A DNA stretch of 49,733 nucleotides from Bigelowiella natans CCMP2755 (Eukaryota > Protista > Cercozoa): positions 1-49,733 of the forward strand of contig ADNK01003503.1 in assembly GCA_000320545.1 (NCBI GenBank). The letters are read 5' to 3'. Both the position numbers and the translations under genes were made by a program. The notes under the pieces were generated by a model. The model had not been told where the DNA came from and made no database searches. It saw only the letters and a program-made list of their open reading frames with translations. How positions within the stretch are numbered: position 1 is the stretch's first letter; each line of letters begins with the position of its first letter. Below, one piece after another: positions 18,869 to 47,825 of the stretch.

Positions 18869-19626
18869 AGCAAAATGAATTAAATTTTCATAATTCTGTT
18901 ATATTTCCTGCTCCCATGTTCATAACTTAAAATCACTTCAGGTGTATCCAGAAATGGTGAAAATCTATCAAGGCTTTCCAATACAACAGTGGGTAACAGA
19001 AGCAGAGTGTCAAGGGACCTAATTGAACTCCGGTGCCCCGATATAGTGTGTCATAAGTATTAGCATTTAATCCATTATCCACTATCTTCCTGGATGCAAA
19101 CTAACCAAGCTCACAAATGTAGATGGGACAAAGATGCAAACCACTTTCTGCTCTAATAATCCTACTATTACTCTACTGCTACTACTCTACTAGTAGAAGG
19201 TGGTAGCAGTAGTACGTCCAATACTTACAGGATGAACAAATTTCTTTTTTTGCTACTAGTCCAGAGGCAGAATTGAATGTGCATTGTCATGTAGCATGTT
19301 GCTGCTGTCATGCAAGCGTACTCGGGATTTAGCTAGATCTACATCTAGAGATGTGCATGCAGCAACCGAACTGCTAGACTGGCCAATGAGAATCTCATGA
19401 TGGTGAACTTGATCGAAGGACCCGCATGCCCAACTAGTCTAGTACTGAGTGATCAAGGCCAGTCTAGCTAGCTAGCAGTGCACATCTAGAAAGCTTCTAG
19501 AGATCTCTAGATTGAACTTCGATGCATTCCAGCATTCTAGCATTTTCATGTGGATTGCACGTGCAGTGTGACATCTACTAGCTAGCTGTCTAGCTGTGTA
19601 GCTAGCTAGACATTCAAGTGCACCAC

Positions 19627-20238
19627 TGTGGTCAGTTTGCGACCACCAAATGCATGCAAGCGCGCATGCACATGCATGAGTGCAAATGGTGGTGCATGTT
19701 GTGCTTTGTTGTGTCCAACATTTTCATGTGAGCATGTTCATGTGGGTTCAGGCTGTTGTGCCCACATCTCAGTTGGCCACATGGGGGCATGTGACGTGAG
19801 TTGCATGCCCAGAAACATTGTCATGGGAGGGGGCGTGCACATCCTGAAACATCCTTCTCGGTCATTTCCCCAACCGTGGATGTTTCCAGGAGCACCCTCG
19901 GCATTTCACTTGCGACAAGGAGTCGGCCTACGTGTTGCAACATTGCAGGGGAAAATGGCCTGCATTTTCCCTGACATTTCAGGCAACTGCTGCTGCGTGG
20001 CATGTTGCTGCTGGGGACGCTGTGTGCCCAGCACGTGATGTGCATTGGCGCGCAACGCGCCAGTTTGGCATGCTCTGAAAGACCCGCAAGCAAGCGGTGA
20101 GCTTTCTCCTTTGGTGGCATGCTCATGCATGCTCACATCGTGTTGTCCATTCAACAGGGTTTTGGTTTTGTGGATTTGAAGCATTGTCAAAGCATGCATT
20201 GCACAGTTGTGTTGTCAGCGCTGCGCAATGCAACTGCA
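19627..20238 (+). repeat. 5' LTR
   Basis: TGTGGT...ACTGCA, 612 bp, ungapped alignment to 25895-26506 (~45 differences by eye, all transitions). Confidence 0.97.
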
Positions 20239-20239
20239 C

Positions 20240-20250
20240 TGGCAGCGGAC
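20240..20250 (+). promoter_or_regulatory. Primer-binding site, TGGCAGCGG (probably ancestral TGGTAGCGG, initiator-Met tRNA type)
   Basis: TGG one base after the 5' LTR; restoring CA->TA gives TGGTAGC, complementary to the ...GCUACCA 3' end of many eukaryotic tRNA-iMet. tRNA identity is an inference. Confidence 0.7.
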
Positions 20251-23200
20251 GAACTGCGTCAAGGGGAAGATCAAGGGAACTCATTTGGGGCTCAGGGGGA
20301 GCCCAGAAACCATGCAGAGGAAGCTGAGAGCAAGGAATCCAAGATTGAAAATCCGGAAGTTTCGACGGGTGGCCATGCGTCACGGGAAGGTGTCCCAGTG
20401 GCTCAGCCCGTGACTTCTGGACGTTCAAATGAGCTTGGATCGGGCGCCCGGCATTCCCTGACGGTGGATGAGGTTCTGGAGCAGTTTGGTGACCTGACTG
20501 TTTCAGCAGGCCGACGAGTTGCAAAGTGTGTTTTGCACTGCGACGGTGTTGACAAAGGTGTGTCTGGTTTGGTCAGAACGATGACTGCTGACTTGGAGTC
20601 GCGAGAGTTCGCATTTCATCGTTGTTTGGATGAGGGAACAACTTTGCGAACTTGGGCCTGCACGATGAAGAAATGCAGAGACCCAGATTGTGCTCCGCCA
20701 GGTGTGGTGGACAGGATGGAGCGGAAGGCCAAGCTGCAGCCTTCGGTCCGAGACATTGCGGGTGCCATCGACTCGTTTCGACGGCACTGCCCTGTCAAAG
20801 GCAAGCTGTGTGTGGCCACTGTGAGCCCGGCACAGTTCCGCAGGAATGCTCGTGGGCTTCACAATGAAATTGAAGCACACGCTGCTTTGGTCGGCCAAGC
20901 CGACTTGGGGTTCGGTTGTGAATGTCTCCAGACGTGTTTGTCCTCTCGTGCGCTTGAGAGGCTCCGTCGGGAGGCCACAAGGAATGCACATGCTTCTGAG
21001 AGCCCAGAGACCCAGTTTGAGATGGCTCTGCAGCACCTCTGCGATGAGGAGGATGAAGAGAAGCTTCAGCGCGACTTCGAGGATGAGCTCGATTTTCTTC
21101 GGCGAAAGCGGTGTCGATGTGTTGATGCGACACACCGGCAGTTTGGCGAGCTTCTTCTGGAGTTTGCTGGACTTCACTTTGGGCATGCTGACAAGTTGCG
21201 GTGCTTCCGGCGCTTGTTGGTGGGTCATCAGTCACGTGACAAGTTCATCGCGCCACTTGACGGATTTGCGCCGCACGACGTCGATGGACTTGTTGAGTTT
21301 TTGCGGCCACTGGAGGAGAGCCATTGCAAGTTTGCGGCTCATCCTCTGCACGCTGATGCATCCACAGTTGCAGGACCTGCGGTGCAACGCGAATGCGTGC
21401 ACTTTTCCAAACGTGGGAAGTGCAATTGCGGTGATGAGTGCAAATTTTTGCACATCAAGCAAAGTTCTGCAAGTGAGCAGAGTGAGCAGAAATCCAAGCA
21501 GTGCACCAAGGAGCAGCTTGATGAGGTGAAAAATCAAGACTGCAGGCTTTGTCTGAAAGGCAAGTGCCATCATGGGGACAAGTGCAAGTTCCGCCACAAT
21601 GCTGGGAGTCTTGATGCTGCTGGAGGGGCGAATGCTGATTTGGCCTCTCATGCCTGTGAGGAATCGGCGGATGCTCCAAGGCAAAACACGGAGGCATCGT
21701 TGCTGCAGGTCAACTCCCAGTCACTTCCCAAGTTGATGAAGGAAAGTGAGCGTCGTCACTGTGAACGAGACCCAAGTTTGAGGTCTCGGAAGAAAGCAAA
21801 ATGCTCCCTGCAGGCGGATGACGGCGCTGTTGCAGTGCTTGGGTCAATCGACGATGGCGCTCAACCTGCCACCATTTCAGAGGCTCCGTGCCAAAAGTTG
21901 AAGTCCTCTGGTGTCAGGTTTGGACGTGGGCCGATGGTGGGTGAGGTGGGTGGCCTTGGTTCATCGATTGAGAATGAAACTTTGCGGGAAGTCGATTTCA
22001 TGGTCCAGATCAAAAAACACAAAAAGCATGGAGCGCACGTTGAACTCCGAATTTGTGCTCTGGTGTCACCTGGACCGGTCTCGCAGGACTTTGCATTGGG
22101 CATGGGCACCCTTGACATGAATGGCATCAACTCTGTTGAGGATCCTGACCCAGCAAAGCGAATTGTCACCATTGATGGTGAAATCGTTGATTCACATCCG
22201 TGCAGCGTCGACGTGCTTTCGGCGACTGTTGTGACCGTCGTGGGCATGGATGTGCCTCCGATGGCAGCTGCTCCCGGCGAGATTTGCAGCATGGATGCTG
22301 ACGCCGTGGGAGAATTGCCTGGAGTGGAGGAGGCATCGTCTGCAGTTCGAAAAGAACCACAAAATGCCGTGGATCATGACTTTGTGAACAATCATGACCA
22401 CACGATCAATGCACAAGGTTTGCCTGATGTCGACATCAAATCGATGGCAAATCCCATCGAATCGGATGGAGTGCTTCTCCAGCGATCATCCAGCATTGCA
22501 CCGTCATCAGAGTTTGGCGACCAACGTGCAGTCGCTGACTCTGACTTGGCAAACGGCCACGTGCTGGACGTGCTTGATCGCTTGGAGAACGAGGTGGTGA
22601 CGAAGGAGAGCTTGCTGCCGGGTTCACAGCAATTCCATTGCCTTCGCACTGTCACTTGCCGCTTCCGGAAGTGTTTTGTCGTGAAACTGCCGGAGGTGGG
22701 AAAGCACGAGCTGCGGGAACCGCACGACGTCAAGCGATGGCTGAAGCCGGGCTGCAAGCCGGTTCGCCAGCGGCCTCACCACTTGGAGCCGAACAAACTT
22801 GAGCTCATGAAGCTCAAGCTCGACCAAATGGCAAGCGATGGGTCACGTCACGAGGTGACAAACGACACATCTGAGTGGGTGTCGCCAGCTTTTTGTGCAC
22901 ACGATGAAGGAAAAGCATCACCACGCGTCGTGGTGGCGATGGGTCGCTTGAACGAGCTCGTCGAGCTCGTGCACGCTGTTTGCCCTGTGACTCGGGACAC
23001 AACAAGAAAATCAATGAGTGCTCAATGGGTGACAGTCTCTGATGGCAAAGCTGCATGGAGACAGCTTGGGATGACTGAGTGTGCGAAAGTGGTGTTCGCA
23101 TTTGTTGCTCTGTTCGCGTCGTTTGCATCTGGCAAGCGACGGCTTGCCGATGGGGCACAAGAACGCTCCTCAAGTTTGGGTCGAGGAGATGGCCACAAGG

Positions 23201-25861
23201 TTCCTCGTTGGGACACCAAACGCTGTTGTGCATTTCGACGACTTCTTTGCCATTGGACAGTCGCCGATGCAAGCGCTTGCAGGTTTTGCCAAGTTTGTGC
23301 AACAGTGCGAAAAGTGCAACAATCATCAAAGTGCTGCCAAGTTGCACACTTTTCCCAAGCGACTTGCAGCAGTGGGTTTGATTGAGGAAGCGAAGACTCA
23401 CCATCCAGATCCCAAGCGCACGGTTGCTGTGGACAAGCCAGAGCGACCAACAAAAGGGAGGCGGTTCTCAAAGCATGTGCGCCGTCTTGTTGGTTTGTTC
23501 ACTTATTGTTTGGAACACACGAAAGGCTTCTGGCAAATCGCTGCGCCGATGAAGGATTTGCTCATGCAAGGAGCGGCACAAGCATGGACAGCGAAGCATG
23601 GTGAAGCTTTGGACACATTGAAAGGCATGCCAAAGAAGGCGGTGTTGTGTGCACCTGATCGTGAAGCTGCACCTGCAAGCCAGCCACTTGTTCTTGACAC
23701 TGACGCGTCTGATGTGGCTGGAGGTGCCACGCTTTCCCAGGTTGTTGGTGGGAGCGAACGCCTGCTGGCTTGTTGCTCGTTTGCGTGGAAGACAAACGAG
23801 AGGAGCTGGCACGTTGCACGAAAGGAGCTTGCGGCTGGAGCGAAGGGGCTTCACCGGTTCCAGCACATTGCTGAAGGCTGTCCGATTTCAATTCGCATGG
23901 ATGCGAAAACGGCGCGGCATTTCGCGCTGCACGGAGTGGACAAAGTGCAGCTGCCGCATGCAAGATTGAGCGCGGCACACTCTGGATGTCCGTTGGTGGA
24001 CATCCAACATGGAAAGGGGGAAAAGCACACCAATGTGGACCCTTTCTCGCGGCCGGATGCTGACGAAACTCGCGACGAAAGGAAGTCGCATCGTCAGTCG
24101 CTGGCCTCTCTTTTCCCGCTGCATGCGGAGGCGGCGAAGCAAGAGGAAAAGCTGGTGAAGTCTGAAGCTTCTCTCTCCTCTTGCTTGGCCAACGAGACGA
24201 TGATCGAACTCGAAGTCCCTCATCTCTCTGTTCATTCTGCAGAGTTGCAGCCTTGGGCGTGCTGTGCTGCAGAGGTCCAGGTGTCGACGACGCTGTCCAA
24301 CATCAACTTGGAGCAGCAGCGTCCCGATTTTGAGAAAATCATCGATGCTCTCGAGGACGAGAAGAATGCCAATCATCTTCTCGTTTCCTCCAAACACAAA
24401 ATGGCTTCTGGTGAGCTGTGTCACACGGGCTCCTTCCAAATTGGAGGAGACATCCCGCTGCAACTTTGTGCACCTTCTGGAAAACGACAGGAGGTGCTGC
24501 AGGCGCACCATGTGGACAGTGTGGCGAATCATCGCAATGCAGATGATCTCGCAAGGAAAGTTCTGCGCGGCTGTCACTGGGTTGGAGTCCAGAAAGCCTG
24601 TCGTGGATTTGCAAGGCAGTGCCAGGTCTGCACTCGTGCCAAAACGCGCACGAAACAGGCGCCGTGTCCACAACATGGCGATCGCGAAATTGATGGCACG
24701 ATTGCAGTGGATGCAATCGGCCCTGTCGACGGCGCTGAGCACTGCACGCAGACGCTGTGCGTTGTGGCCATTGGTCACATGCATGCAAGGGCAGTGAAGC
24801 GCACAAGCTCGGCGCGCACGGCGGATTTCATCGTGTCGCATGTGCTGAAACACGGATGCCCAAAGCAGATCATTGTTGACCAAGGGCCGGAAAACGTGGG
24901 CAAAACTGTGCAGCACTCACAAAATCGGCTGCGGCCAAAGTTTGTCAAGATGTCAGCTGAGAATGGCCAGGGGAACTCTGCACTCGAGCGGAAGCATCGA
25001 CCCATTGACAATGGGATCATGGCGATGCTTCTGCAAAGTTTGGAGGACCGGCACAACTGGCATGAACACTTGGAAATGATGACACTTGGTGTGAACACCA
25101 CAATCGATGAGTGTGGTCATTCACCGGCTCACCTCACGTTTGGACATCAGCCAAAGTTCGTGGCTGATGTGGAGAGCAAGTCGGTGGCGGCTCCAGGGAC
25201 CGGGGACCTCGATCAGAGGATCCAAGATCTGGAAAAGATGCGGCTGCTGCGTGCTGCTCTCAAGGAAAATTGTGAATTGGTGAAAAATTTCACGAGAAAC
25301 GAGAAGCTCAATGCTCAAGACGAGTGCAAAGCAGGGGACATGGTGTGGCTTTTCCGCAAGGAAAATCGCAAAGAAAGTGCTGTCACGAAAAAACGTGAAA
25401 TCAAAAAGACTGGCCCTGTGACTGTCGTGGCCAGGAGCAGCAAATCCCATGCCTGTCAAATCATCGACCCGAAGACGGGGCACAACAACAATGCACACGC
25501 GAAACACCTTTCGCCTCGTGGTGCACTTGCCCCGTTGCCAGAAGTGCGCCCGGCAGCTCCAGACATTGAGGACAATTTTGCTGGCGAGGATGATGAGGAT
25601 GCTGATGGTTCCTCCAGCTCGTCGGACTCCCAGGGGCCTCCTGGTGACCGGATTTCACGGGATGACGTTGTTCAAGGTGAACGCAATGGGAGACCAACCA
25701 ATGTTGGTCCGTGCATTTCTTGGATTTTGTGTTTTCGCAAACACGTGCCACTGCACAAACAAATTGGTGGCGGTGCAGTTGGTGCAAAAATTTTTTTTCT
25801 TCCCTTTTCTTCTGATTTTCTTTTGGCACGCGTGATCCTGCTCGTGTGTCATCATTGTTGA
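20251..25861 (+). pseudogene. gag-pol polyprotein pseudogene (Gag with two CCCH fingers, protease, RT, RNase H, integrase); frameshift at ~23115-23140
   Basis: ORFs 20119-23385 and 23081-25861. PR IDDGAQ; RT KPVRQRPHHL, SEWVSP, LPMGHKNAP, VVHFDDFF (HFDD at 23231-23242); RNase H LDTDASDVAGGATLSQ, RKEL; IN HH..H/CQVC, VDAIGP, VDQGPE, ALERKHR, GDMVWL. True start and stop uncertain because TAA/TAG codons have been erased. Confidence 0.93.
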
Positions 25862-25872
25862 GTCAGGGGTGC

Positions 25873-25894
25873 AAAAAATGGGGGGGGGGGGCAG
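25873..25894 (+). promoter_or_regulatory. Polypurine tract
   Basis: AAAAAAT, a run of G, then CAG, directly before the 3' LTR. Confidence 0.88.
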
Positions 25895-26506
25895 TGTGGT
25901 CAGTTTGCGACCACCAAATGCATGCAAGCGCGCATGCACATGCACGAGTGCAAATGGTGGTGCACGTTGTGCTTTGTTGTGTCCAACACTTTCATGTGAG
26001 CATGTTCATGTGGGTTCAGGCCATTGTGCCTGCATCTTGGTTGGCCACATGGGGGCATGTGACGTGAGTTGCATGCCCAGAAACATTGTTGTGGGAGGGG
26101 GCGTGCACATCCTGAAACACCCTTCTCGGTCATTTCCCCAACCGTGGATGTTTCCAGGAGCACCCTCGGTGTTTTGCTTGCGACAAGGAGTCGGCCCACG
26201 CATTGCAACATTGTGGGGGAAAATGGCCTGCATTTTCCCCAATGTTTCAGGCAACTGCTGCTGCGCAGCACGTTGCTGCTGGGGACGCTGTGTGCCCAGC
26301 ACGTGATGTGCATTGGCGCGCAACGCGCTGGTTTGGCATGCTCCAAAAGACCCGCAAGCAAGCGGTGAGCTTTCTCCTTTGGCAGCATGCTCATGCATGC
26401 TCACATCGTGTCACCTGTTCAACAGGGTTTTGGTTTTGTGGATTCAAAGCATTGTCAAAGCACACATTGCACAGTTGTGTTGTTGGCGCTGCGCAATGCA
26501 ACTGCA
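25895..26506 (+). repeat. 3' LTR
   Basis: 612 bp, TGTGGT...ACTGCA, followed by TSD ACCAC. Confidence 0.97.
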
Positions 26507-26993
26507 ACCACAATCTGCACCAGTGCAATGCATGTCCAGATGTCGTGGTCACATCACGGTGCTCACATGCTGGCATGCTAGCTCTCTGGCTCCAGAGCTG
26601 ACCAGCCAACTGCAGCGTGCTGGCATGCTCTGGTGCTGCATGTCCAGATCGCATCCAGAGATGTCTGGGTGTGCCTGCGCTAGCCAGCTAGCTGCGTGCT
26701 GATGTGACCTAGTTGGCTAGCTAGGACGGCATCACAGCATGCTGGCATGTCTGGATGTGTTGTCCATGTCTAGATGTGCACAAACAATTCCAGATTTGCA
26801 TGCCCACCTCTGGACCTAGCCACAGCTAGGTGGTGCCAGCTCCAGAGCTAGCTAGATGTGTCTTCGTCCTCCTCCAGCTGCTGTGAACACTCTGGACCTG
26901 TCAACTCAGGAACAACTCTGGAACTCCGGAACCATCCACAGCTCCAGAGCTGTCTAGCTGCGTGTGCCAGTTGTGCCCCAGCTGCCAGTCCAG

Positions 26994-28430
26994 CATTGAA
27001 CATTGAACATTGAACATTGAAAAAAACATTGATCAAAACTGCGTGCGCCAGAACCACATGGGAGACAGGCATGCTGGCATGTGCACGCAGCAGAGCCTCA
27101 ACAAACATCATTGCAAGGACTTGTCATCATCCTGTTGAAGGTGAGTCATCCGGGAGTGAAGGCAAACAGCCGTCAATTGTCAGGTCATGGGAGCAGTCAG
27201 AATGTGTCCAAACTCTGACAGCTCAGAGTCAGGAAGGAAAAACTAGCTAGCTAGGAGCGCCCAACGGGGAGAAACCAGACTGGCGATCAGACAGCAGCGA
27301 AATCATCGAGAAGAACAATGGTTCGACGGAAAGCCCTGTCGATTTCTTTGTCAGTGGAAGTGTCACAGAAGAAACACCAGACGTGGTCTAGCAGTGTGCG
27401 TGTGTTGGCCAACTAGCCAAGCTCCAGAGCTAGAGAGCTCCAGAGCTGATCAAAGACCAGCAATGCCAGAATGCACGCACCGACGCGAAAGAACCGTGAG
27501 ACCGTGAGCATCAATGATTCAACCAATGCACCTAGCTAGCTAGCTAGCCAGGCTGTCAGGCCAACTCTGCTGGTCCAGAACTAGCTAGATGGCCAATTCC
27601 ATGGTCTTCTGACCGTCACCGGATCTTTGCTGACAAATTGAAGTCGCCTCTGGTGCCGATCGTCCATCATCATGATTCATGGCATGTGCGTGTCGTCAAA
27701 GAAGCACGGTGAGCACAGATCAATGAACAATGAACAATGAACAATGAACAAAGCGTTGATCAAAAACTGCATGCGCCAGAACCACATGGGAGACAGGCAT
27801 TTGCACGCAGCAGAGCCTCAACAACACTCGTGGCAAGGCTGGATCCAAAATGAATTTCACAGATGATTTCCTTCGGATCGTTTCAGTCAATGAACAATGA
27901 ACAATGATGATGAACTGCATTTCCAAAAATTCTGAAAATGTTGCGAGACATTTGCAGTCACACTCACAAAAATGAAGACAATGAACAATGAACAATGAAC
28001 AAAGCGTTGATCAAATCTGCATGCGCCAGAACCACACGGGAGACAGGCGTTTGCACGCAGCAGAGCCTCAACAACACTCGTTGCAAGGACTTGTCAGCAC
28101 CCTGTTGGTGATGAGACACAAAAACCAGCTAACAAGCCATCAGAGGCTCCAAAAAAGCCGCGTGAAGGGATGAAGTTGCCATGGCTACCCATCTGAAGCG
28201 CCGGAGCCGGAACAAGGGATGAAGTTGCCATGGATGCTGTTTGTTGGTGCCGTTGAAATGTGAGTGGATTGCAACTGAAACTGGCAATTGGAGTGGCGAA
28301 CAGCAGCAAAATTGTCAAGCAGGACAATGGTTCTACGGAAAGCCCTGTCAATTTCTTTGTCAGTCGAAGGGACACCAGATCTGGCCCCCAAAGCAAGGCA
28401 GAACTGACAATTCCCTTTTTTCTTCACAGA
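26994..28430 (-). mobile_element. Cluster of three related truncated elements with heptamer-repeat tails (probable non-LTR retroelement 3' ends)
   Basis: Copies at ~26994-27370, ~27721-27838 and ~27979-28430 share TTGATCAAA..CTGC.TGCGCCAGAACCAC..GGGAGACAGGC..TGCACGCAGCAGAGCCTCAACAA; each starts with (CAATGAA)n or (CATTGAA)n. 27316-27360 also matches 28325-28369. Orientation and class inferred from the tails. Confidence 0.6.
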
Positions 28431-29052: not shown

Positions 29053-32000
29053 ATGAGTAACAATAGGGGTAAGAGAGCCATAACTCACACAAATAGCCGC
29101 AATGTAAGTAGAATTCCTCGAGCTACCAAGGAAAGAAATAGTCGATCGAATAATTCCAGCACCATCTCGAACGCTGCGAACCCGGCCTCTCGCGCATCGC
29201 GTCGTTCCGGACGAAGTGGAAGGAAAAGACGTCTTCAATCTGAAACAAAGGCTCAAGGGTCCTCATCTGCGAACGCTGTATCAAAATCGCAGAGTAGCAG
29301 TAGCAATGCGGATGCGAATGATGATGATGGGCACATCTTTGTTGCTGTTCGTCCTCGCCCGCTCACTACCCAGGAGCTAGCCAAAGGGAGCTGGACGTGT
29401 GTGGAAGTACGGGGAAAGAAAGTTGTACTTCAAGACCCTAAAGATGCTACCTCAAAGGATCCACTTCATAGAACACGTGCTACAAATTTCTCCCTGGATG
29501 CAGTTTTTACTGCGGAGGCGGACCAAAAGAAAGTGTTCGACGCAACTTCGAAAAGGATCATAGGAAGCATCCTTAACGGAAAGAATGGAACTATATTTGC
29601 CTATGGGGCCACAGGTTCAGGAAAGACATACACTATGACAGGGACTGCGAAGAATCCAGGGCTGATCCCTAAAATAGTGTCAAGTCTCCTAAAGAGGCTA
29701 GAGCATGATCAACTTCCCTTTCGAATAAAAGTTTCTTATATCGAAATTTACAATGAAACTATGCGAGATCTTTTAACTGATCCAGACGGAAGACAACGAC
29801 CGGTTGCTTTGCGTGAGCATCCATCTAAAGGGGTAATGATAATGGGGTGCCAAGCACGAGAAGTACAAACAGAGCATGAAGTAGATGCAGTCATAAAAGA
29901 AGGCGATTGTAATCGTGCCACAGATAGCCATAGTCTGAATAAGACATCTAGTAGAAGCCATGCCATCTTCCAGATGAAAATCTTGGTAGGAAATAAGAGA
30001 GTACCGATAAAACTCTCTCTCATAGATCTAGCAGGAAGCGAAAGAGCCAAAAAAACAAAGACGGATAAGAAGATGCTTAATGAGGGAGCCAATATCAATA
30101 AATCTCTCCTTACTCTAGCCAAGTGTATAACAGCTCTTGGAATGAAATCCAAAAAGGGTCTTTTCATACCCTATCGTGATAGCAAACTAACACGAGTACT
30201 GAAGGATTCTCTTTGCGGTGACTGCTCAACCTCAATGATAGCTTGTATATCTTCTTCTTCGTGTCAGGTAGTAACAATAGTGCTCACTATCATGCAGATA
30301 AACATGAAACTGACGATACCAAAAAACAAATACTGAATATAAGTATCATATTTTCAGCATGCATGTAATAGTTATCCATCTCCTTTGTTGACATTTTCAA
30401 AATCTAAACAGTTTGACGAGACAAGAGAAACTTTGACGTACGCACATCGAGCTAGAAATGTAAAAATAAAACCTTTGGAGCAAACTCGAGTTAAGATACA
30501 TCGAGAAGAGTATAACAAAATGGTGGGAGAGATGAAAGAAGAGTTGGGTAGGTTAAGGAGTACAATTGGTTATAGCGACATGAATAAGCAATTAATTGAG
30601 ATTGAAAGAAGTGGGTCAGATACAAAAGACTCACCAGCTTCAGGGATAAAGGGAAATCCTGTAAATTGTAATAAGGAAGCAGCACAGAAACTTGCAGATG
30701 AACTTGTTCAAAATTTTCAAGATCGCATTCAAGCACGACAGAGTATGTTGGAGCTGAGAGAACAATCAGCCTCAAACATGACTCAAGTAAGTGATTTACA
30801 GCATCAGCTGGGAGAAATGGCAAGAAGGTTGCCTACGGATTCTAAAGCAAAAATTAAAACTGTTTATAAAATGAGAAAGCAAAAAATAAGAGACATAACT
30901 AAGATGTTGCGGAAGCTTGGGGAGGGGGAAAATACCAACACTAAGATGTACAATGAAATGAAGGAAGAGCTCCAAAAACTTGAAAGTCAGGGCCATATGT
31001 TAATGGAAAAAGCTGCTAGGTCAAAATGGTCAAAGGAGGGTAAACATGTGTTACGTTCAACGATAGAGAGGTGCATGATGGAACTGAAGAATGCTGAACA
31101 TGAACTCCATGCGCGATTTCTAATGAGCAAACTCACATCCCAGGAGTCGGCCATAAAATCGCAACAACAGCTCCTGAAAAAACACAATATATCCTTTGTA
31201 CCTCTAGATGAAAGAATGAAGATTTACAATGATTTGCACAAGGAGTTCAGATTTGGTAGTAAGGCACCAAAGCTAGAATTTGGTGCACATAATGCTGAAA
31301 TGAAGAAGAAAGTAAAGATGCAGAAGAGAAGTGGAGAAGGTCGACAGCTGTTACAAAATGTATCCCAGACTAAGAAATCCTCCTCAAAAGCCAATACGAC
31401 CAAATCAACACACTTCGATAAGGCGAAGCTCTCTGCAGCAACTGCAGCAGCAGCATCCCGACGCAACAGACGCCGTGTGCTAAAAACAGCAAAATCAACA
31501 CCTTCAATGCGTATCAATAGCAAAATTAGGTTTGATCTCAAGTCGAACAACGCACAAAGGAAGAACCGAAACCATCTAAAAAATTATAGGAGATCCCAGC
31601 AGAAGAGCATAAGTAGGAGAATGTCTCGATGGGCAAGAAGGGCACCAAGTGTAAGCGGGGTAAGAAAAACAGCTCCAGCTGTTGGAAGAAGAAGAGGATA
31701 CTACAAGGCTCGATCCACGGTAGCTCGGAAAGACAGTAGAAATAATAGAACTGGTGTTAGTGTTATCAAAAATAGCAGCTTTGCCGCAGCAGCTGCTCGG
31801 GCTCCTCCAGGTAAGATTGACTCTATCGGCAAGGTAAAAAGTCATCTAGGATTCAGCAATCGCCCATCTCCATCTCTTCTGAATAGTAACTTGAAAGAAG
31901 CACAGTCTTCGCCATCTTTTTCGACCGGATATGCTGGTTTGGCCCTGAAGCAAAAACAGCAACGAAAGTCACGGCGAGCTCGTTCCAGAATTTTGCAGAG

Positions 32001-40924: not shown

Positions 40925-41002
<78 letters not shown>

Positions 41003-41749
41003 CTCTAACTCTCTCCTCCCTGCTCCCTTACTCTCTCTCTCGATTCTTTTAGCACCGTATGGTATGAGCTTACGTCCTGTAACCTAAAAAATGAACAATA
41101 TCTCACAAGCACGGCGCGAGCACATGACATATCCGCACGCACGTTGGCACCACGTTTGAACTTGTATCTGTTCATTACCATTCATTACTATTATCATTGT
41201 TTTGTTCGCCTACTACTACAACACACCGCAAGTTTCTCCTTGAAGGAAGTGCATGTCTTGGGATTGCACATAGTACGCATCTAATAGAAAGATAACATCA
41301 TTGGAATGGAAAGGCAGTCCATATGTAAGAAGAGAGCAGCGATTTGGTACCTCATAGAATTTCGCAATGAGATCTGGTCTTCGGACTCTAACAATATCCT
41401 CAGACTCCCAGGTGTATCTGATGAGGAAGGAGAGAGAGAAGACAAAAAAACATCATGTTATTCTAGCAATCCTCGTGACATTGAAAGTTAGAGACATCAT
41501 TTGTGTTCGAATTTTTGTTGCTAATACAATCTGAAGCCCCTCCATCGAATCATAAAGGAATAAGGCCCGTCGTCATTGCCCGGATTGATACTCCGTCGGC
41601 TTATGATCTCCTCCATCACACTCGGCAGTCCTCCGACGGCTTTCCCTCCTGTCAATGATCAAGTTCAGCTGTTCCCGCGTTCTTCCCGCTCACAGTGCAG
41701 TGAATTGTTGCAGCTCGTTTTTGCCAGTGTCAGTTGTAAATCTGTTGTC

Positions 41750-41965
41750 GTCATTGAAAATGACATGCACTTCTGTCTCCAGATCCTTTCAGATGTAGTC
41801 TGTTTGTTTCTTTTTTGGAGTCATGCCATTTTGGCATCCTAGCTAGTTGATCTGCTAGTCACAGTCCTCACTGAAATCAGTTCGAGGCACTGCATTTTGC
41901 ACACTGCAAGTGTCTTGCTACACTTTGGAAATGTAGTTTTTCATCATTGTTTCATTGTTTCATTG
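41750..41965 (+). repeat. Dispersed repeat copy 1 (TpA-mutated), ends in TTTCATTG-type repeats
   Basis: Aligns with ~46715-46975 (AGTCCTCACT.AA..AGTTCGAGGCACTGCA...TTTGGAAATGTAGTTTTT.ATCATTGTT). Confidence 0.75.
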
Positions 41966-42230
41966 GATGAGGGTTGGTGCTCCTTGTGCAAGTCCCACAA
42001 AGACGTCCCCATCCAACACCTTCTGTTTTCTTGTCAAGGAACGTCTGACATCAGACACCGTTTTTGGAGCAGGGTTCGTCACCTCATCTCTCGTCATCTA
42101 GCTGAACCTCGTGATGAGGTTGTCAACCTGCGTGTTTTTTCGTCCATGTCTTCACTGGAAAAATTGCGCTCTTGCTGGTGATGCAGGTGGGCCATCAATC
42201 ATCGTTCATGATGACTGGATGCGTGCAACT
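41966..42230 (+). mobile_element. Non-LTR retrotransposon ORF2 C-terminal fragment (CCHC zinc-finger region)
   Basis: WCSLCKSHKDVPIQHLLFSCQGTSDIRHRFW fits the C-x2-C-x(n)-H-LL-x2-C...R...W motif at the end of LINE ORF2 proteins. Confidence 0.65.
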
Positions 42231-43732
42231 GTGAGTCTGGCTAGCTGGCACATGGCTAGACAGCAAGCTGGCCTAGTGGCAGGAATGAGCAGGCACATGC
42301 TCACACCACTAGACCGGCCCACCTAGCCCACCTAGCCACGCTAGCACGCTGATGACACGTGCAGCAGAGACACAGTCTGGCAGTGTTGTCCAGTTGTGTA
42401 CACATCCACGATGCGCATGCCAGCATGTGTCATTTTGTCCCTTTGCGTGTGTTCTCGTGTTCTCTGCAACGCATGTGCACATTCAAATTTCCACGTGCAC
42501 CAGCTGCGCCACGCACGTCTGGACGTGTCTGCTTGATGTTCATGCGAAGGTGAGGAGTGCACATTGGCACACGTGTGCAGGCAGACTAGCAGGCTTCACA
42601 TGGAGCAATTTGCAAAATTAGTGAGTTTGTGTGAACAAAACTTGTGAAGGCGTTGACATGTTGCTGTCATTGAGCAAGCTAGCAAGGCCAGAAGGTGGCG
42701 CTCACAGAGCCAGAGAGACACAGTGCTCAGAGTGTCATGTGCGTCTGTGATGACACACATCTTTTTTTCTCTTCATTGCACACCGCCACGCACGTGGCGC
42801 AACGTGCTAGCGTGACACTTTTCATGTGGAATCACAGTCCCCATGCGTGCAAGCCGTCTGCGACATGTCCATCAACCACTTCACATGTCTGGATGTGCCC
42901 CCGTGCAACCACGTGAGCACGCATGTGTCGTAGTTTGTTTGGTGCATGTGTGGACGTGAACAGAGCATGTGTGCTTTTCAAGTGCACCTGAAGTGCATGG
43001 GTGCATGTGTTCTCTTTCGATCGTGCACTAGCTGTCAGCATGTGGACTTGTGGTCCCCATGTTTTGACACAATGCTAGAATGCCCAGCTAGCGCGCAGCT
43101 AGCGATGGTGCGGATCGATGTCAGCAATTAACACGATGCATGCGCACCCATGCACCGTGTAATGCGTGCAATAATGTGTGTGCATGTGCAGCATGCGCTG
43201 CTGTGCCCATCCATGGTCTCGACCGTGCGCTCATCTAGTCATGTACATTTGTCTAGATTTGAAACAATGTCATTGTTGTTGTATTTCCATCGATCAACAC
43301 TAGAACACAACGAATGCAATGGTCTACAAATGCTGCCCCAATGTTTCTCTGGGGCATACATGGTAGAGATCATGGCTGCAATCCCTACTGCACACGGACG
43401 CAATCCATGCAAGTCGCATTAATTATAGTACAGAACCCATGCTAACAAATCATGCCTTCACAAAAATATTCTGGATGAAGTCTCAAGGTCTAGCCTTCGT
43501 TACGACTGAGAGCATCATAGCAGTAGCTTATTTCATTTTAAGGTCGCTTGGTTGAGAATACGCCATCGTAGTGGTATTGTAACCAATCGACGAATAACAT
43601 GCCGGGATTTTCTTCTTTGGGTCAAGGACGTGCTGATACATGTAACAATAACACAACCGGGTCAAACACTGAATGAAGTAAATGTATCTCATAAATTAGC
43701 TAGTGTAAAATATACGTTAGGTACATATTGAC

Positions 43733-43780
<48 letters not shown>

Positions 43781-43836
43781 GCACATACTAGTTGTGCGCG
43801 CATGTGTATGTGTTTGTGCATGATCATTACATCCGT

Positions 43837-43881
<45 letters not shown>

Positions 43882-44039
43882 TATAATAATAATAATAATA
43901 ATATGCACATATTACTTGTGCGCGCGCGCGCGCGCATGTGTGTGTGTGCATATTATCCTTAAACTAAACTAAATATCATCTGATGGCATGATATCCAACA
44001 CTGTGTGATTATTTAAGGTGGCTTATAACAAAGATAATG

Positions 44040-44377
44040 TATTTATTACGATAATCTTGCACATTTCGAATGTATTGAAGACGATATTGTGAGCATGGGA
44101 ATCTGCCATTTCCACCTATATTGATTAAATCATATGATAAGGAGTCCACACACACGCACACACAAAACAATAAGACTGTTCATAAATATCATCTTTCTTC
44201 TATGCAACGACATATTCATCGTTGTGGTCTGTCATTTTCTTACTGTTCGTGTCGTTTGATCTATGCTGGCGTGCATTAGATCCATCTTCCCACTCAGTTC
44301 ATCCGTCAAATTTGCGACAATTTCCTGGTTAAATAATGTTGAAGGCAGTAGTAAAAAAAAACCGTTTGTTTTTCCTA

Positions 44378-44411
<34 letters not shown>

Positions 44412-44930
44412 CTGTTTTTCCAAATGCATCGATGATGGTTCTTTTAGCAGGTACCATATGACTGTCGACAGAGTCCATCTTCGTATTCATTTCATGCGTA
44501 TCTGTAAATGGCATATTATATAAATTATAATTGCAAATATTATAATCTTTACTGCTGCTATATAAACTACATATGGAAAATGAGCTGCTGCAGCTGCTGC
44601 TACTATCACTACCATTACCTAGGGTAAGCGCTGCCATCAGATTATTCATTGATCCTTCAGTAAGTTTCACACCACAAAAATATCCCACAACATCAAAATA
44701 AAGCATCACAACCAATAAAATCACAGGAAAAAGGGTAGGACAGACAAGTATGATATTTGGAAGCTTGTGTAATGATCACATTATCATTATCATCAACTTG
44801 AGGATGATTGTGTGATTATGATTACCTGTAAGATCTTTTAGAGTCTTCATATCATTATTAAGACTTGTCATCTAACAACATAGGACAACCGTAACGAGAC
44901 GAGAACGAATAGCTCAACGGCTTTATGTAT

Positions 44931-45016
<86 letters not shown>

Positions 45017-45127
45017 GTGTGTGTGTTGAAGTGAATGCAACCGAGTGCGTACTTTTTTAGTCACCTTTGAATTCGCCCCAAGGGCGAGAGCAGCGAGAAG
45101 AATGACAATTAAAGCCAATAGCACCAT
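44040..45127 (-). CDS. Small multi-exon protein with signal peptide and coiled-coil-like segments, function unknown; 3' end approximate
   Basis: ATG 45127 MVLLALIVILLAALALGANSK; exon-like pieces MTSLNNDMKTLKDLT, MNTKMDSVDSHM and EIVANLTDELSGKMDLMHASIDQTTRTVRK separated by microsatellite-containing introns. Confidence 0.45.
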
Positions 45128-45190
45128 GTTTATACATGTGATGATAAGCACCCTACAATTCAATAATGCACAACAGAGAGAGGGGGGAGG

Positions 45191-45233
<43 letters not shown>

Positions 45234-45727
45234 GGCCATGAGAGAGGGGAAAATAGTGATGGACCCCCGTAAACACAAGTGCGAAATATCACGATATTTA
45301 GAATTATACACAGCACACAGCACACATCACAAAAACACACCCACACAAAAACGTTAACAAGTGCGCTACTAACATATTTTGATTAAGTTGTTTCTATGTT
45401 TAATTTAGGATAAAAGGAAAGCAATCTAAGAGATAGATCAAAAAGATGTGTAAGATAAAAACAACAATGGATATGCTTATTTTTAAGTAAACTTTATAAA
45501 TCGACACACTTCCGCTGCCATTTCTCCAGAATCTGATGGATAATTTACAGTTAGTGGAGGAAATGTATCCCATAGTAGATATAAATAATCATATGTATGA
45601 ATCAATGTATCATCCCATCATCGATATAAATAATATGTAAATGATTCCACATAATACACGATATATGACAGAGGATCCATAAACATGTGTACACATGTGT
45701 GATGTACGTGCGTGTGTTGGGGGGGGG

Positions 45728-45762
<35 letters not shown>

Positions 45763-46165
45763 CATTGATTATTGGGTTAAGTAGTGAGAGTTAACCTCAG
45801 ATATCGATGATTTCTCTAGATCCTCCTTTATTTTCATGTAATCTCCTCCTAATACGAAGTGGACATTATGTGCAATATAACCTGTATATCCTTAAACAAC
45901 TCCTCTGCGTTACAGAGTTGTTTCACTCCCTGTAAATCTTAAATATTTTTGGTGTCTGGTAGTTAATTTGTATTTTGTAAGATTATGTAGATCTATCTAT
46001 GAGGAGGAATATAGAAGATGAAACCAAGCCTTCTTAGAATGTTTCGTCCTTGAAATGATCATACGAGTTGACATTTAAGTGCACGTTCGCATTCATCATA
46101 GACATATTTAGAATTATTTCATTTCACTGAACACATGATTGAAAGAATGGATGGTATTCGTAGTC

Positions 46166-46238
<73 letters not shown>

Positions 46239-46714
46239 CGTATTTGCTCGTCATTCAATGTCCACCTTGCACGTCGCACAAAGCTCCACCCTTTGCCTCC
46301 TCAATCATTTGCAGTCTATGAAGAGTAGTTATCAAAAGCTCATTTGAAAAGTAAATTTATTTTAGTAAAATCTCTTCCCTTCTTTAAATTCCCGATAATA
46401 TCCATTATGTATACCCACTTTCTGGCACAGGCCCTACTCTCCTATCAATTAAACAATTAATGGGAGGGAGGATCTTCGTCACGTTGAGGAGCTGTTCCTT
46501 CTTCAAATGTTAAGACATTATTACTCGATCACTTAGGTTTCAAATTCTCAGCACTTTTGTTGTGCTTCTTGATGTCGTAGGAACCAGACCCGCTGAAATA
46601 TGTAGGTCGAATGCGATAGATGGGGTACCTTATGTGGTTCTTCCCATTGCGAATTTGAGTCTAGATGACGATCTTTTTCATCAATTATCTAGAGCATCAT
46701 TCGCAATGTTGTAA

Positions 46715-46975
46715 GTTACAAAATGACATGTATTTGGAGATGACGACAAAAATACATCCCTGAAAATGTAAAAGTGGCATGCCTTTGGAGTTGACGACAG
46801 CTATATTGTATCCCAATAGCTAGATTATGTCAATTTAAAAAAAAAAACCTGCTAGTTTACTAGTCATAGTCCATGGTAGTCCTCACTAAAGCTAGTTCGA
46901 GGCACTGCACAGTTTCGTACACTGCTACAAAGCCGTCTTGTAACATTTTGGAAATGTAGTTTTTTATCATTGTTC
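46715..46975 (+). repeat. Dispersed repeat copy 2 (TpA largely retained)
   Basis: Homologous to 41750-41965 but with TA at several aligned sites where copy 1 has TG or CA. Confidence 0.75.
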
Positions 46976-47825
46976 CTTGTGGTATTGCTTTATGGCCTAT
47001 AGCCAAACTGCGAGCCACCTCAATCATTAATTAACAAAGCAACAATGCTACAAGCTTGCTATTTTCATCTGGATAACGTGAGCTAGCAAGAAAGAGACTT
47101 CTCCGTAGTAGCTATTAGCGGTTGGGCTCGGGGCATAGTTCGCCTGCCTATTCCTTTTGTTCATGGTTCTAACTCGATCCTTGCAAAACGCAACAACAAA
47201 CTGTACTTTTGGGTAGCGCCTCGTCGCCCTGATCTACACGCTCGTGGATCAACGATTCAAGTGTGTAGGCGGCGTATGGCGTGTAGCGCCTTCGAGGAAG
47301 CTCTTAGTCAGCGGTATAACTATAGTGTACATCGATCGAATCATGCTCGTTTCACCTGTCGCAACCGTCTCTATGGCGTTTAGTACGAGTTGGTACTGCA
47401 TTCCTCACTTAGATTTGAGTGCAAACATCTTATGTGGCACTGCATTACAAACAGCAACGGCATAAACTTGGAAAAGTATAATAAGGTGATCAGCCGCTGC
47501 TTTGCATAGCTGCATTATGATGACCATTTAAAAGATTTTATCACTTCAATGCATCCGGCCTCATAAGGTGATTTCTTGTTGCGTTGTAGTTATCCGCAAA
47601 CCAGCGGCTACAGCTCTCATGTTATATCAATTCGTCTCTGCTATATTGCGCATTTTTCGTGCGATTGAAAGATTTCTATTTCCAGTGATACAAGAATATT
47701 TTTTATAACAGGCAAGGCGGGTGTTGTCGCGTGCATGTGTTATAGCCCCCATGCTAGCATGATGAATCCAGCGTATATATCATTGATAGCAGTGCATTGT
47801 GAACAGATAAAAAATGCACATATAC

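What the first reader, a model, noticed from the sequence alone, without database searches (positions are those of the whole stretch)
19270..28430. Repeat-targeted TpA->TpG/CpA hypermutation: a candidate 'reverse-RIP' genome-defence system
Seen: across the 6.9-kb gypsy element I found only two TA dinucleotides by eye (19929-19930 and 23504-23505), where several hundred are expected, while CpG is plentiful. The 1088-aa ORF has no Tyr and the 926-aa ORF has one. Conserved Tyr positions are His (TAY->CAY) or Cys (TAY->TGY): RT YxDD->HFDD, RT PY->PH, RNase H AYYS->ACCS, integrase YYW->CHW, CCCH finger YGD->CGD/HGD. Both T->C and A->G outcomes occur, so the A of TpA is changed on either strand. Adjacent host genes have normal TA and Tyr. 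Established: fungal RIP and 5mC decay are C->T and RIP creates TpA; ADAR/APOBEC editing of retroelements is strand-biased. Neither fits. Inference: a chromosomal mutator acts on repeats. Candidate mechanisms are a DNA adenine deaminase (TadA-derived DNA editors prefer TA), an adenine modification that decays, or error-prone repair by a Pol eta-like enzyme (A->G at WA/TA motifs). I know of no named pathway for this, but could not search the literature.
Basis: partly seen in the sequence, partly recalled or inferred. Interest (0 to 1): 0.96.

Follow-up and report, generated by a model that had tools for sequence, protein, structure and literature searches.

The report
Known TA-erasing hypermutation of a retrotransposon
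A jumping gene in the alga Bigelowiella natans has had every TA step in its DNA rewritten to TG or CA after it inserted; the effect is real and striking, but a 2026 preprint already reported this mutation process in the same alga, so this is a clean new example and not a discovery.

Summary
Window 19627-26506 is a Ty3/gypsy LTR retrotransposon (5-bp target duplication, TG..CA LTRs) with 2 TA in 6.9 kb, where about 375 are expected.

Intact sister copies in the same genome are 99.3-99.7% alike, have identical LTRs, one 1812-aa ORF and about 500 TA. At those sites the window copy reads TG 219, CA 220, CG 20 and TA 0. Its two LTRs carry different TG/CA outcomes, so the change came after integration, at DNA level, on either strand.

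A preprint already reports this process in B. natans from mutation-accumulation lines (Mettrop et al., bioRxiv 10.64898/2026.01.13.699255). This scan had also met it on another piece of the genome (s1-417266).

"Repeat-targeted" is not supported. At least five near-identical young copies are untouched, some lying inside erased DNA, and the preprint's main target is single-copy.

Details the preprint does not mention:
- A slower second-tier target at ApT.
- Slow CTA/TAG contexts, with CTAG slowest.
- No strand-coordinated runs of outcomes.
- No new in-frame stop codons, so long ORFs survive.

The enzyme is unknown; a DNA adenine deaminase is the best guess. Raw reads could not be checked.

The parts
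19627..26506 (+). Ty3/gypsy-type LTR retrotransposon copy, TpA-erased (2 TA left)
   Evidence: Matches the natural intact copies L003/L004/L005 end to end at 83% identity. Pfam finds RNase H and the integrase zinc domain. Of 499-501 family TA sites, 0 are kept.
19627..20238 (+). 5' LTR (TG...CA ends)
   Evidence: It keeps one TA, at 19929.
25895..26506 (+). 3' LTR
   Evidence: Compared with the 5' LTR, 38 of 102 TA-site columns differ (TG versus CA). Seven of 509 other columns differ: 5 at ApT and 2 forming one TG/CA pair.
19622..19626 (.). Target-site duplication ACCAC (left)
   Evidence: Read directly from the sequence.
26507..26511 (.). Target-site duplication ACCAC (right)
   Evidence: Read directly from the sequence.
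20240..20254 (+). Primer-binding site; TGGCAGCGGACGAAC here, TGGTAGCGGACGAAC in intact copies
   Evidence: The one difference is a TA->CA change.
20119..23385 (+). 1088-aa ORF covering the gag/CCCH-finger/N-terminal pol part, with no Tyr
   Evidence: It aligns to residues 2-951 of the intact 1812-aa ORF at 76% identity.
23081..25861 (+). 926-aa ORF covering RT, RNase H and integrase, with one Tyr; in a different frame from the first ORF
   Evidence: It aligns to residues 950-1812 of the intact ORF at 80% identity.
19300..19626 (.). Left flank: TA-poor, CTAG-rich island DNA
   Evidence: most surviving TA are CTAG.
26507..28420 (.). Right flank: DNA with no TA outside CTAG up to 28129 and few beyond (three more by 28420); includes a 430-bp dispersed repeat at 27979-28405
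41700..43200 (.). Second TA-free (CTAG-only) island in the window, holding a 147-bp dispersed repeat at 41819-41965

Best explanation
**Shown.** A Ty3/gypsy element integrated here (target duplication ACCAC). Afterwards, as chromosomal DNA, it lost essentially every TpA to TpG or CpA. This is the TpA hypermutation already reported for Bigelowiella natans.
- Each TA site was hit once, on a randomly chosen strand.
- Neighbouring sites were hit independently.
- A slower second tier changes the A of ApT.
- TA sites flanked as CTA or TAG are slow, and CTAG is the slowest.
- No new in-frame stop codons arise, so long ORFs remain while all Tyr codons and many Ile, Leu and Val codons are rewritten.

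**Inferred.** Targeting is a property of the locus or its state (silenced foreign DNA). It does not depend on sequence or copy number.

**Most likely chemistry, inferred.** An enzyme deaminates adenine to hypoxanthine in duplex or transiently opened DNA, with a strong preference for T on the 5' side. Hypoxanthine is read as G at the next replication. The enzyme is probably a zinc deaminase of the TadA/ADAT fold.
For: **Direction and timing**
- Natural sister copies L003/L004/L005 are 99.3-99.7% alike and their LTR pairs differ at 0-1 position. They hold 499-501 TA. The window copy has TG 219-220, CA 220-222, CG 20 and TA 0 at those sites. L002 and L006 show the same pattern.
- The window's two LTRs differ at 38 of 102 TA-site columns. 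All 7 other differences are of hypermutation type: 5 at ApT and one TG/CA pair.

**Specificity**
- A>G per A is 0.41-0.56 after T, 0.11-0.19 in NAT contexts, and 0.02-0.10 elsewhere, which is similar to the reverse G>A rate.
- CG outcomes concentrate in ATAT, TTAT and ATAA contexts, as ApT second hits predict.
- In the partly converted LTR L028, 13 of 22 CTA/TAG sites are kept against 0 of 29 others (p = 1e-6). In saturated copies, 5 of 49 CTAG sites are kept against 9 of 2416 others (p = 4e-6).
- A followed by C is chosen about 1.6:1. From my own knowledge, this matches TadA's native U33-A34-C35 substrate.

**No strand runs.** The z-score for adjacent identical outcomes is -0.8 to +0.6 in three copies.

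**State-dependent targeting**
- Copies are bimodal: 100% or about 0% of TA kept, with two intermediates at 23-29%.
- Intact copies abut erased DNA with a sharp border.

**Independent experiment.** In mutation-accumulation lines, 230 of 231 new mutations in two viral inserts were A>G or T>C, and the authors report that all of these fall on TpA. The rate was about 6e-7 per site per generation. It occurred only in some lines, and the main target is single-copy.

**Organism and candidates.** P0001 is named jgi/Bigna1/147227. The genome holds at least 6 loci with the cytidine/adenosine zinc-deaminase (CDA) fold and one ADAT1/ADAR-type gene.
Against: - No enzyme is tied to the process. TA is its own reverse complement, so sequence alone cannot say whether the A or the T is the chemically altered base.
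- The preprint's candidate, ADAT2/ADAT3, is an essential tRNA enzyme with no shown DNA activity in this alga.
- State-dependent targeting is inferred from which copies escaped. No chromatin, small-RNA or expression data were available.
- Raw reads for this locus were not examined.
- Copies agree on TG versus CA at 0.60-0.64 of sites, above the 0.5 expected without bias. The ±2 context only partly explains this.
Confidence: 0.6

Rival explanations
1. The thymine, not the adenine, is the altered base. An oxidase or other modifying enzyme converts T at TpA to 5-hydroxymethyl- or 5-formyl-uracil, which mispairs with G and gives T>C on either strand.
For: TA and AT are both self-complementary, so every tally fits 'T next to A' as well as 'A next to T'. 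From my own knowledge, 5-formyluracil causes T>C changes, and dinoflagellate 5hmU favours TpA.
Against: No Tet_JBP domain was found in a six-frame search of the genome. This is a weak negative, because the control genomes did not ring either. From my own knowledge, no case is known of oxidised thymine driving saturating mutation.
Confidence: 0.12
2. Error-prone repair synthesis by a Pol-eta-like polymerase at WA motifs, recruited to silent chromatin, produces the A>G changes.
For: From my own knowledge, Pol eta gives A>G at WA motifs.
Against: The rate at AA is background (0.05-0.08) while TA is saturated, although a WA motif includes AA. Outcomes show no patches or runs. Complete conversion of about 500 sites with almost no other changes does not look like patch resynthesis.
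Confidence: 0.04
3. The editing occurred before integration, on the element's RNA or cDNA (ADAR-like or APOBEC-like), and is not a chromosomal process.
For: From my own knowledge, ADAR prefers a U on the 5' side.
Against: - The two LTRs of one insertion, identical at integration, carry different outcomes at 38 of 102 TA-site columns.
- Both strands are hit equally, 219:220.
- Flanking non-retroelement DNA is also TA-free.
- New mutations arise in chromosomal DNA-virus inserts.
Confidence: 0.01
4. The family is intrinsically TA-free through composition or selection, or the TA-free sequence is an assembly or base-calling artefact.
For: The 430-bp repeat beside the element is TA-poor in all 12 sampled copies, so some families do spread in TA-poor form.
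Against: - Intact gypsy copies in the same assembly have TA observed/expected of 0.87-1.03.
- Independent erased copies differ in TG/CA outcome.
- Illumina mutation-accumulation data show the process live.
Confidence: 0.02
5. A homology-dependent process like RIP: repeats are sensed by copy number and then mutated.
For: Erased DNA in the sample is mostly repetitive. The two partly converted copies are short solo-LTR-like pieces, as a length threshold would predict.
Against: - Among the five copies L003, L004, L005, L008 and L009, which are 99.3-99.7% alike, 100% of TA is kept at every family TA site aligned.
- The preprint's 186-kb target is single-copy, and other multi-copy viral inserts are not hypermutable.
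- If the intact copies were targeted at the measured rate, then by my estimate zero LTR TA differences in about 500 sites would cap their age at about 200 generations.
Confidence: 0.08

Closest known systems
TpA hypermutation of integrated viral DNA in Bigelowiella natans (Mettrop et al., bioRxiv 10.64898/2026.01.13.699255, April 2026)
   Same: Same organism, same TpA->TpG/CpA spectrum on both strands, and foreign or selfish DNA as the target. The authors also found 124 TpA-depleted clusters and an excess of reverse-transcriptase and DDE domains among TpA-poor predicted genes.
   Different: - Their text has no occurrence of LTR, gypsy or retrotransposon, no comparison of copies within a family, and no mention of CTAG.
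- They state that hypermutation occurs only at TpA. Here a slower ApT tier and slow CTA/TAG contexts appear.
- Their targets are only partly depleted (TpA observed/expected 0.45). This element is saturated.
Fungal repeat-induced point mutation (RIP)
   Same: It acts on DNA, is specific to a dinucleotide, hits either strand, runs to saturation, and inactivates mobile elements. The window shows the same all-or-none look among copies.
   Different: - RIP changes C>T at CpA and so creates TpA. This process erases TpA.
- RIP creates stop codons. This process creates none in frame (TAA/TAG fall from 145/78 to 0/0).
- RIP needs duplication and a premeiotic stage. Here near-identical copies escape, and the preprint saw the process in lines kept by single-cell bottlenecks, which I take to be asexual growth.
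APOBEC3/AID and ADAR editing of retroelements and viruses
   Same: Hypermutation with a neighbour-base preference used against selfish nucleic acids. ADAR also prefers a U on the 5' side of the edited A.
   Different: Those act on single-stranded cDNA or on double-stranded RNA before or without integration, and they leave strand-biased, clustered changes. Here the change follows integration, is strand-symmetric (219:220), and shows no runs.
TadA/ADAT2-ADAT3 tRNA adenosine deaminases, amphioxus ADAT2 DNA editing (PMC10354150), TadA-derived base editors, and fungal sexual-stage A-to-I mRNA editing by TAD2/TAD3
   Same: The edited A is always preceded by U/T (tRNA U33-A34). The mild preference here for C on the 3' side fits the UAC loop of bacterial TadA (the resemblance rests on my own knowledge). 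The genome holds ADAT3-like and several TadA-like genes.
   Different: No activity on chromosomal DNA at defined loci is known for the natural enzymes. No link between any of these genes and the process has been tested.

Membership tests
B. natans TpA hypermutation (Mettrop et al. 2026) | Changes are A:T>G:C transitions at TpA, giving TpG or CpA | tested here: met
   Of 499 TA sites, 219 became TG, 220 CA, 20 CG and 0 stayed TA. A>G after T is 0.41-0.56 against 0.02-0.10 elsewhere, apart from ApT.
B. natans TpA hypermutation (Mettrop et al. 2026) | Acts on chromosomal DNA of foreign or selfish origin in Bigelowiella natans | tested here: met
   The LTR pair diverged after integration. The element is a gypsy retrotransposon. 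A family protein is named jgi/Bigna1/147227.
B. natans TpA hypermutation (Mettrop et al. 2026) | Measured new-mutation rate about 1000 times background at the locus | not testable with these tools
Indirect evidence: TA sites are 100% converted while the LTRs show 0 differences of any other class.
Fungal RIP | C>T at CpA (TpA created, CpA/TpG lost) | tested here: not met
   The direction is the opposite: TA is lost and TG/CA observed/expected rise to 1.4-1.6.
Fungal RIP | Triggered by sequence duplication | tested here: not met
   Five copies that are 99.3-99.7% alike keep all their TA. A single-copy target is reported.
Pre-integration deaminase editing (APOBEC/ADAR type) | Strand-biased changes shared by both LTRs | tested here: not met
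   The TG:CA split is 219:220. The LTRs differ at 38 of 102 TA-site columns.
Ty3/gypsy LTR retrotransposon | LTRs with TG..CA ends, target duplication, primer-binding site and polypurine tract, and RT-RNase H-integrase order | tested here: met
   Searches show 612-nt LTRs, the ACCAC duplication, the primer-binding site and a G-run before the 3' LTR. One search finds RVT_1 (weak, 20 bits), RT_RNaseH and Integrase_H2C2 in that order in the intact copy, plus CCCH fingers.
TadA/ADAT-fold DNA adenine deaminase as the agent | A specific deaminase shown to act on TA in DNA | not testable with these tools
   Only a census was possible: 6 CDA-fold loci and one A_deamin gene. No fusion to a chromatin- or DNA-binding domain was visible in the open frames read.

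The most novel reading that the evidence does not exclude
The process is a switch-like marking system. Once a locus is flagged, independently of its sequence or copy number, a DNA adenine deaminase converts TpA quickly, then ApT, and finally CTAG.

The same process would then have produced the TA-free DNA, rich in CATG, TGCA and CTAG, that fills many intergenic islands of this genome. It would also have produced the many long unannotated 'genes' called there.

Intact gypsy copies escape because they are not yet flagged. Their lineage may have survived earlier light editing: at about 50 sites the old copies read a mix of TG and CA where all young copies agree on one form.
Probability: 0.35. Interest if true: 0.7.

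Novelty: already known. Interest (0 to 1): 0.4.

Why it matters
A natural system that erases TpA in chosen stretches of chromosomal DNA is the mirror image of fungal RIP. If an adenine deaminase drives it, it would be the first natural eukaryotic DNA adenine editor used for genome defence. That credit belongs to the 2026 preprint.

This locus adds a clean natural experiment: one retrotransposon family with both pristine and fully erased copies, and an LTR pair that serves as an internal clock. From it come several testable rules:
- A target hierarchy of TA, then AT, with CTAG last.
- No strand coordination between neighbouring sites.
- Escape of near-identical copies.

It also carries a practical warning. 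Erased DNA loses TAA and TAG in all six frames, so gene finders will call long spurious ORFs there.

Tried and rejected
- **Genome-wide scan.** All statements about islands rest on about 60 sampled loci.
- **Thymine oxidase.** No Tet_JBP match was found. This is uninformative, because the controls did not ring either.
- **Hypoxanthine repair.** Neither Endonuclease V nor AAG-type glycosylase was detected. These are weak negatives in an intron-rich genome searched exon by exon.
- **Relatives in other species.** Only B. natans itself and distant gypsy elements were found, so the signature could not be sought in other species.
- **Context model.** A two-factor model (-2 and +1 positions) fitted to strand choice was not identifiable. 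I used the raw contrasts instead.
- **Another note's lead.** A self-comparison of 41000-47500 did not recover the 'two copies of one repeat' mentioned in a separate note.
- **No reconstruction.** Natural intact copies served as references for pairwise tallies.
Full report
**Observation**

Window 20001-26000 holds one TA in 6 kb, where roughly 50-55 per kb would be expected from base composition. TG and CA are at 1.4-1.6 times expectation and CpG is at 0.74-0.98. Host DNA on either side has TA at 0.79-0.83 of expectation.

The two long ORFs have 0 and 1 Tyr.

**What the element is**

It is a Ty3/gypsy-type LTR retrotransposon at 19627-26506.
- The LTRs are 612 nt (19627-20238 and 25895-26506) with TG..CA ends.
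- A 5-bp target duplication, ACCAC, flanks it.
- A primer-binding site follows the 5' LTR, and a G-run precedes the 3' LTR.
- Pfam finds RNase H and the integrase zinc domain.
- A natural intact sister copy carries one 1812-aa ORF with CCCH fingers, a weak RT match, RNase H and integrase.

The organism is Bigelowiella natans. A family protein in the public collection is named jgi/Bigna1/147227, and earlier notes of this scan say the same.

**TA loss is derived, not intrinsic**

The genome (91.4 Mb) holds about 12 young LTRs and about 25 old ones of this family.

Copies L003, L004 and L005 are 99.3-99.7% alike. Their LTR pairs differ at 0-1 position, and their TA is at 0.87-1.03 of expectation.

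At their 499-501 TA sites the window copy reads:

| Outcome | Sites |
|---|---|
| TG | 219-220 |
| CA | 220-222 |
| CG | 20 |
| TA | 0 |
| Other | about 40 (rest of the 499-501) |

L002 and L006 show the same pattern. The young copies keep 496-497 of 498-499 TA relative to each other.

**The change came after integration**

The window's two LTRs were identical when the element integrated. They now differ at 38 of 102 TA-site columns, typically TG in one and CA in the other. They differ at only 7 of 509 other columns.

By my reading of the listing, those 7 are five ApT changes and one TG/CA pair. None belongs to any other class. In L002 the 24 non-TA differences are 15-16 ApT changes, three TG/CA pairs and 2 others.

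So TA sites went to completion while ordinary mutation left the LTRs essentially untouched. This rules out editing of RNA or cDNA, intrinsic composition and selection.

**Spectrum**
- **First tier.** A>G per adenine is 0.41-0.56 after T, which amounts to one hit per TA site.
- **Second tier.** The rate is 0.11-0.19 for A followed by T (NAT contexts).
- **Background.** The rate is 0.02-0.10 elsewhere, matching the reverse G>A rate. That background reflects subfamily divergence.
- **CG outcomes.** Across 13 erased pieces (2465 sites), CG outcomes concentrate in ATAT (47), TTAT (27) and ATAA (18). Second hits at ApT would give exactly this.
- **3' neighbour.** An A followed by C is chosen about 1.6:1.
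- **CTAG inside the element.** In the window copy all eight aligned CTAG sites were converted.
- **Slow contexts.** In the partly converted solo-LTR-like piece L028, 13 of 22 CTA/TAG sites are kept against 0 of 29 others (p = 1e-6). In saturated copies, 5 of 49 CTAG sites are kept against 9 of 2416 others (p = 4e-6). CTAG is therefore the slowest context. This helps explain why CTAG is the only TA-containing word left in the flanking islands.
- **No strand runs.** The TG or CA choice at neighbouring sites is independent, with z between -0.8 and +0.6 in three copies and a longest run of 7-10. This argues against processive action on one exposed strand, and against a transcription or replication asymmetry.
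- **Agreement between copies.** Copies agree at 0.60-0.64 of sites. They are therefore largely independent, with some site bias left unexplained.

**Consequences for coding**

In the window element, TAA and TAG fall from 145 and 78 to 0 and 0, while TGA rises from 80 to 144. The process cannot create a new in-frame stop.

This explains the 25 ORFs of at least 120 aa in all frames across the TA-free stretch 19628-26702; one search's 26th ORF is the kinesin gene outside it. It also explains the two long Tyr-less ORFs. Tyr fates are H 37, C 27, R 6 and 1 kept.

'AYYS' is ACYS in the intact copy. HFDD is native to the family and not a product of the process.

**Targeting**

Copies are bimodal. They keep either 100% or about 0% of TA, apart from two short pieces at 23-29%. 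Intact copies lie directly against, or inside, erased DNA with a sharp border (L004, L008, L009, L016, L018, L020).

The preprint measured about 6e-7 mutations per site per generation. I estimate this as roughly 1e-5 per TA site. At that rate, zero TA differences in about 500 LTR TA sites of the young copies would cap their age near 200 generations if they were targets.

It is more likely that they are not targeted.

**Literature**

Mettrop et al. (bioRxiv 10.64898/2026.01.13.699255, April 2026) ran mutation-accumulation lines of B. natans.
- 231 of 302 new nuclear mutations fell in two regions: a single-copy giant-virus insert and a virophage insert.
- 230 of those 231 were A>G or T>C, and the authors report that all of these fall on TpA.
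- The process appeared only in some lines.
- The authors found 124 TpA-depleted clusters genome-wide, with reverse-transcriptase and DDE domains enriched.
- They proposed ADAT2 (Bn78255) with ADAT3 as the candidate enzyme.

Their text has no occurrence of LTR, gypsy, retrotransposon or CTAG, and it describes no comparison of copies within a family. This scan had already reached the same verdict on another piece of the genome (s1-417266).

**Mechanism**

The best-supported chemistry is deamination of adenine to hypoxanthine in DNA by a zinc deaminase with a T preference on the 5' side.

From my own knowledge, all TadA/ADAT substrates have U before the edited A, and bacterial TadA's loop reads UAC. 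That fits the mild preference for C on the 3' side.

A six-frame census finds the following:
- Two TadA-like paralogues (C980, C3623).
- A further TadA-like gene (C3286).
- A short fragment (C3588).
- A dCMP-deaminase-like gene (C570).
- An ADAT3-like gene (C1679).
- One ADAT1/ADAR-type gene (C2414).

None showed an obvious fused reader domain in the frames I read.

Endonuclease V and AAG-type glycosylase, the usual hypoxanthine repair enzymes, were not detected. These are weak negatives.

TA and AT are self-complementary, so a thymine-directed chemistry (5hmU or 5fU) cannot be excluded from sequence. No Tet_JBP domain was found, but that search was uninformative.

**Wider pattern**

In about 60 sampled loci, islands of 0.6-3 kb with no TA outside CTAG are common around short dispersed repeats.

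The 430-bp repeat beside this element is TA-poor in all 12 sampled copies, with only five TA/TG/CA-mixed sites. It therefore spread after losing its TA.

**Limits**

Raw reads were not checked. No genome-wide scan was possible. The enzyme and the targeting signal remain untested.

Noticed in passing
window 41700-43200: A second island with no TA outside CTAG (GC 0.52, TG/CA observed/expected 1.75/2.0). It holds a 147-bp repeat at 41819-41965, and the search returned its scored maximum of matches to that repeat at 93-100% identity.
   Followed up: partly
window 43600-43950: An extremely TA-rich stretch (up to 58 TA per 200 bp, GC 0.18), partly palindromic, lies only about 400 bp from the TA-free island. 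The erased domain therefore has a sharp edge.
   Followed up: no
window 27979-28405; L032-L042: A 430-bp dispersed repeat (over 600 first-look candidates for the 1.9-kb query that holds it; most scored matches fall on this repeat) is TA-poor in all 12 sampled copies (0-4 TA each). Only five sites are mixed for TA/TG/CA. It seems to have spread after its TA was erased.
   Followed up: partly
L003:1647-7085 (intact sister copy), residue about 983: The apparently active family carries HFDD where reverse transcriptases normally have YxDD. This is unusual for an element with identical LTRs and an open 1812-aa frame. It could be a fixed relic of an old TAT>CAT change, which I did not test.
   Followed up: partly
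L001/L002/L006 versus L003-L005, whole element: At about 52 sites all three young copies share TG or CA while at least one old copy has the opposite form; at 42 of them the old copies are mixed TG and CA among themselves. Either the young lineage lost about 10% of its TA to the same process and kept transposing, or the old subfamily had gained those TA. The direction is unresolved.
   Followed up: partly
L004, L008, L009, L016, L018, L020 (flanks of intact copies): Intact young copies are often inserted into or next to TA-free DNA, including old erased copies of their own family. This suggests an insertion preference for such regions. Pfam found no chromodomain in the intact ORF.
   Followed up: partly
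whole genome (G000): Six-frame searches found no Endonuclease V and no AAG-type purine glycosylase, the two usual enzymes that remove hypoxanthine from DNA. This is a weak negative in an intron-rich genome.
   Followed up: no
window 29053-30336: An ordinary host gene next to the island: a kinesin motor domain (Pfam E = 1e-94) with normal TA content.
   Followed up: yes
G000 contigs C980 and C3623 (L055, L056): Two closely related small TadA-like or guanine-deaminase-like genes with the same C-terminal tail. The preprint does not discuss them as candidates.
   Followed up: partly
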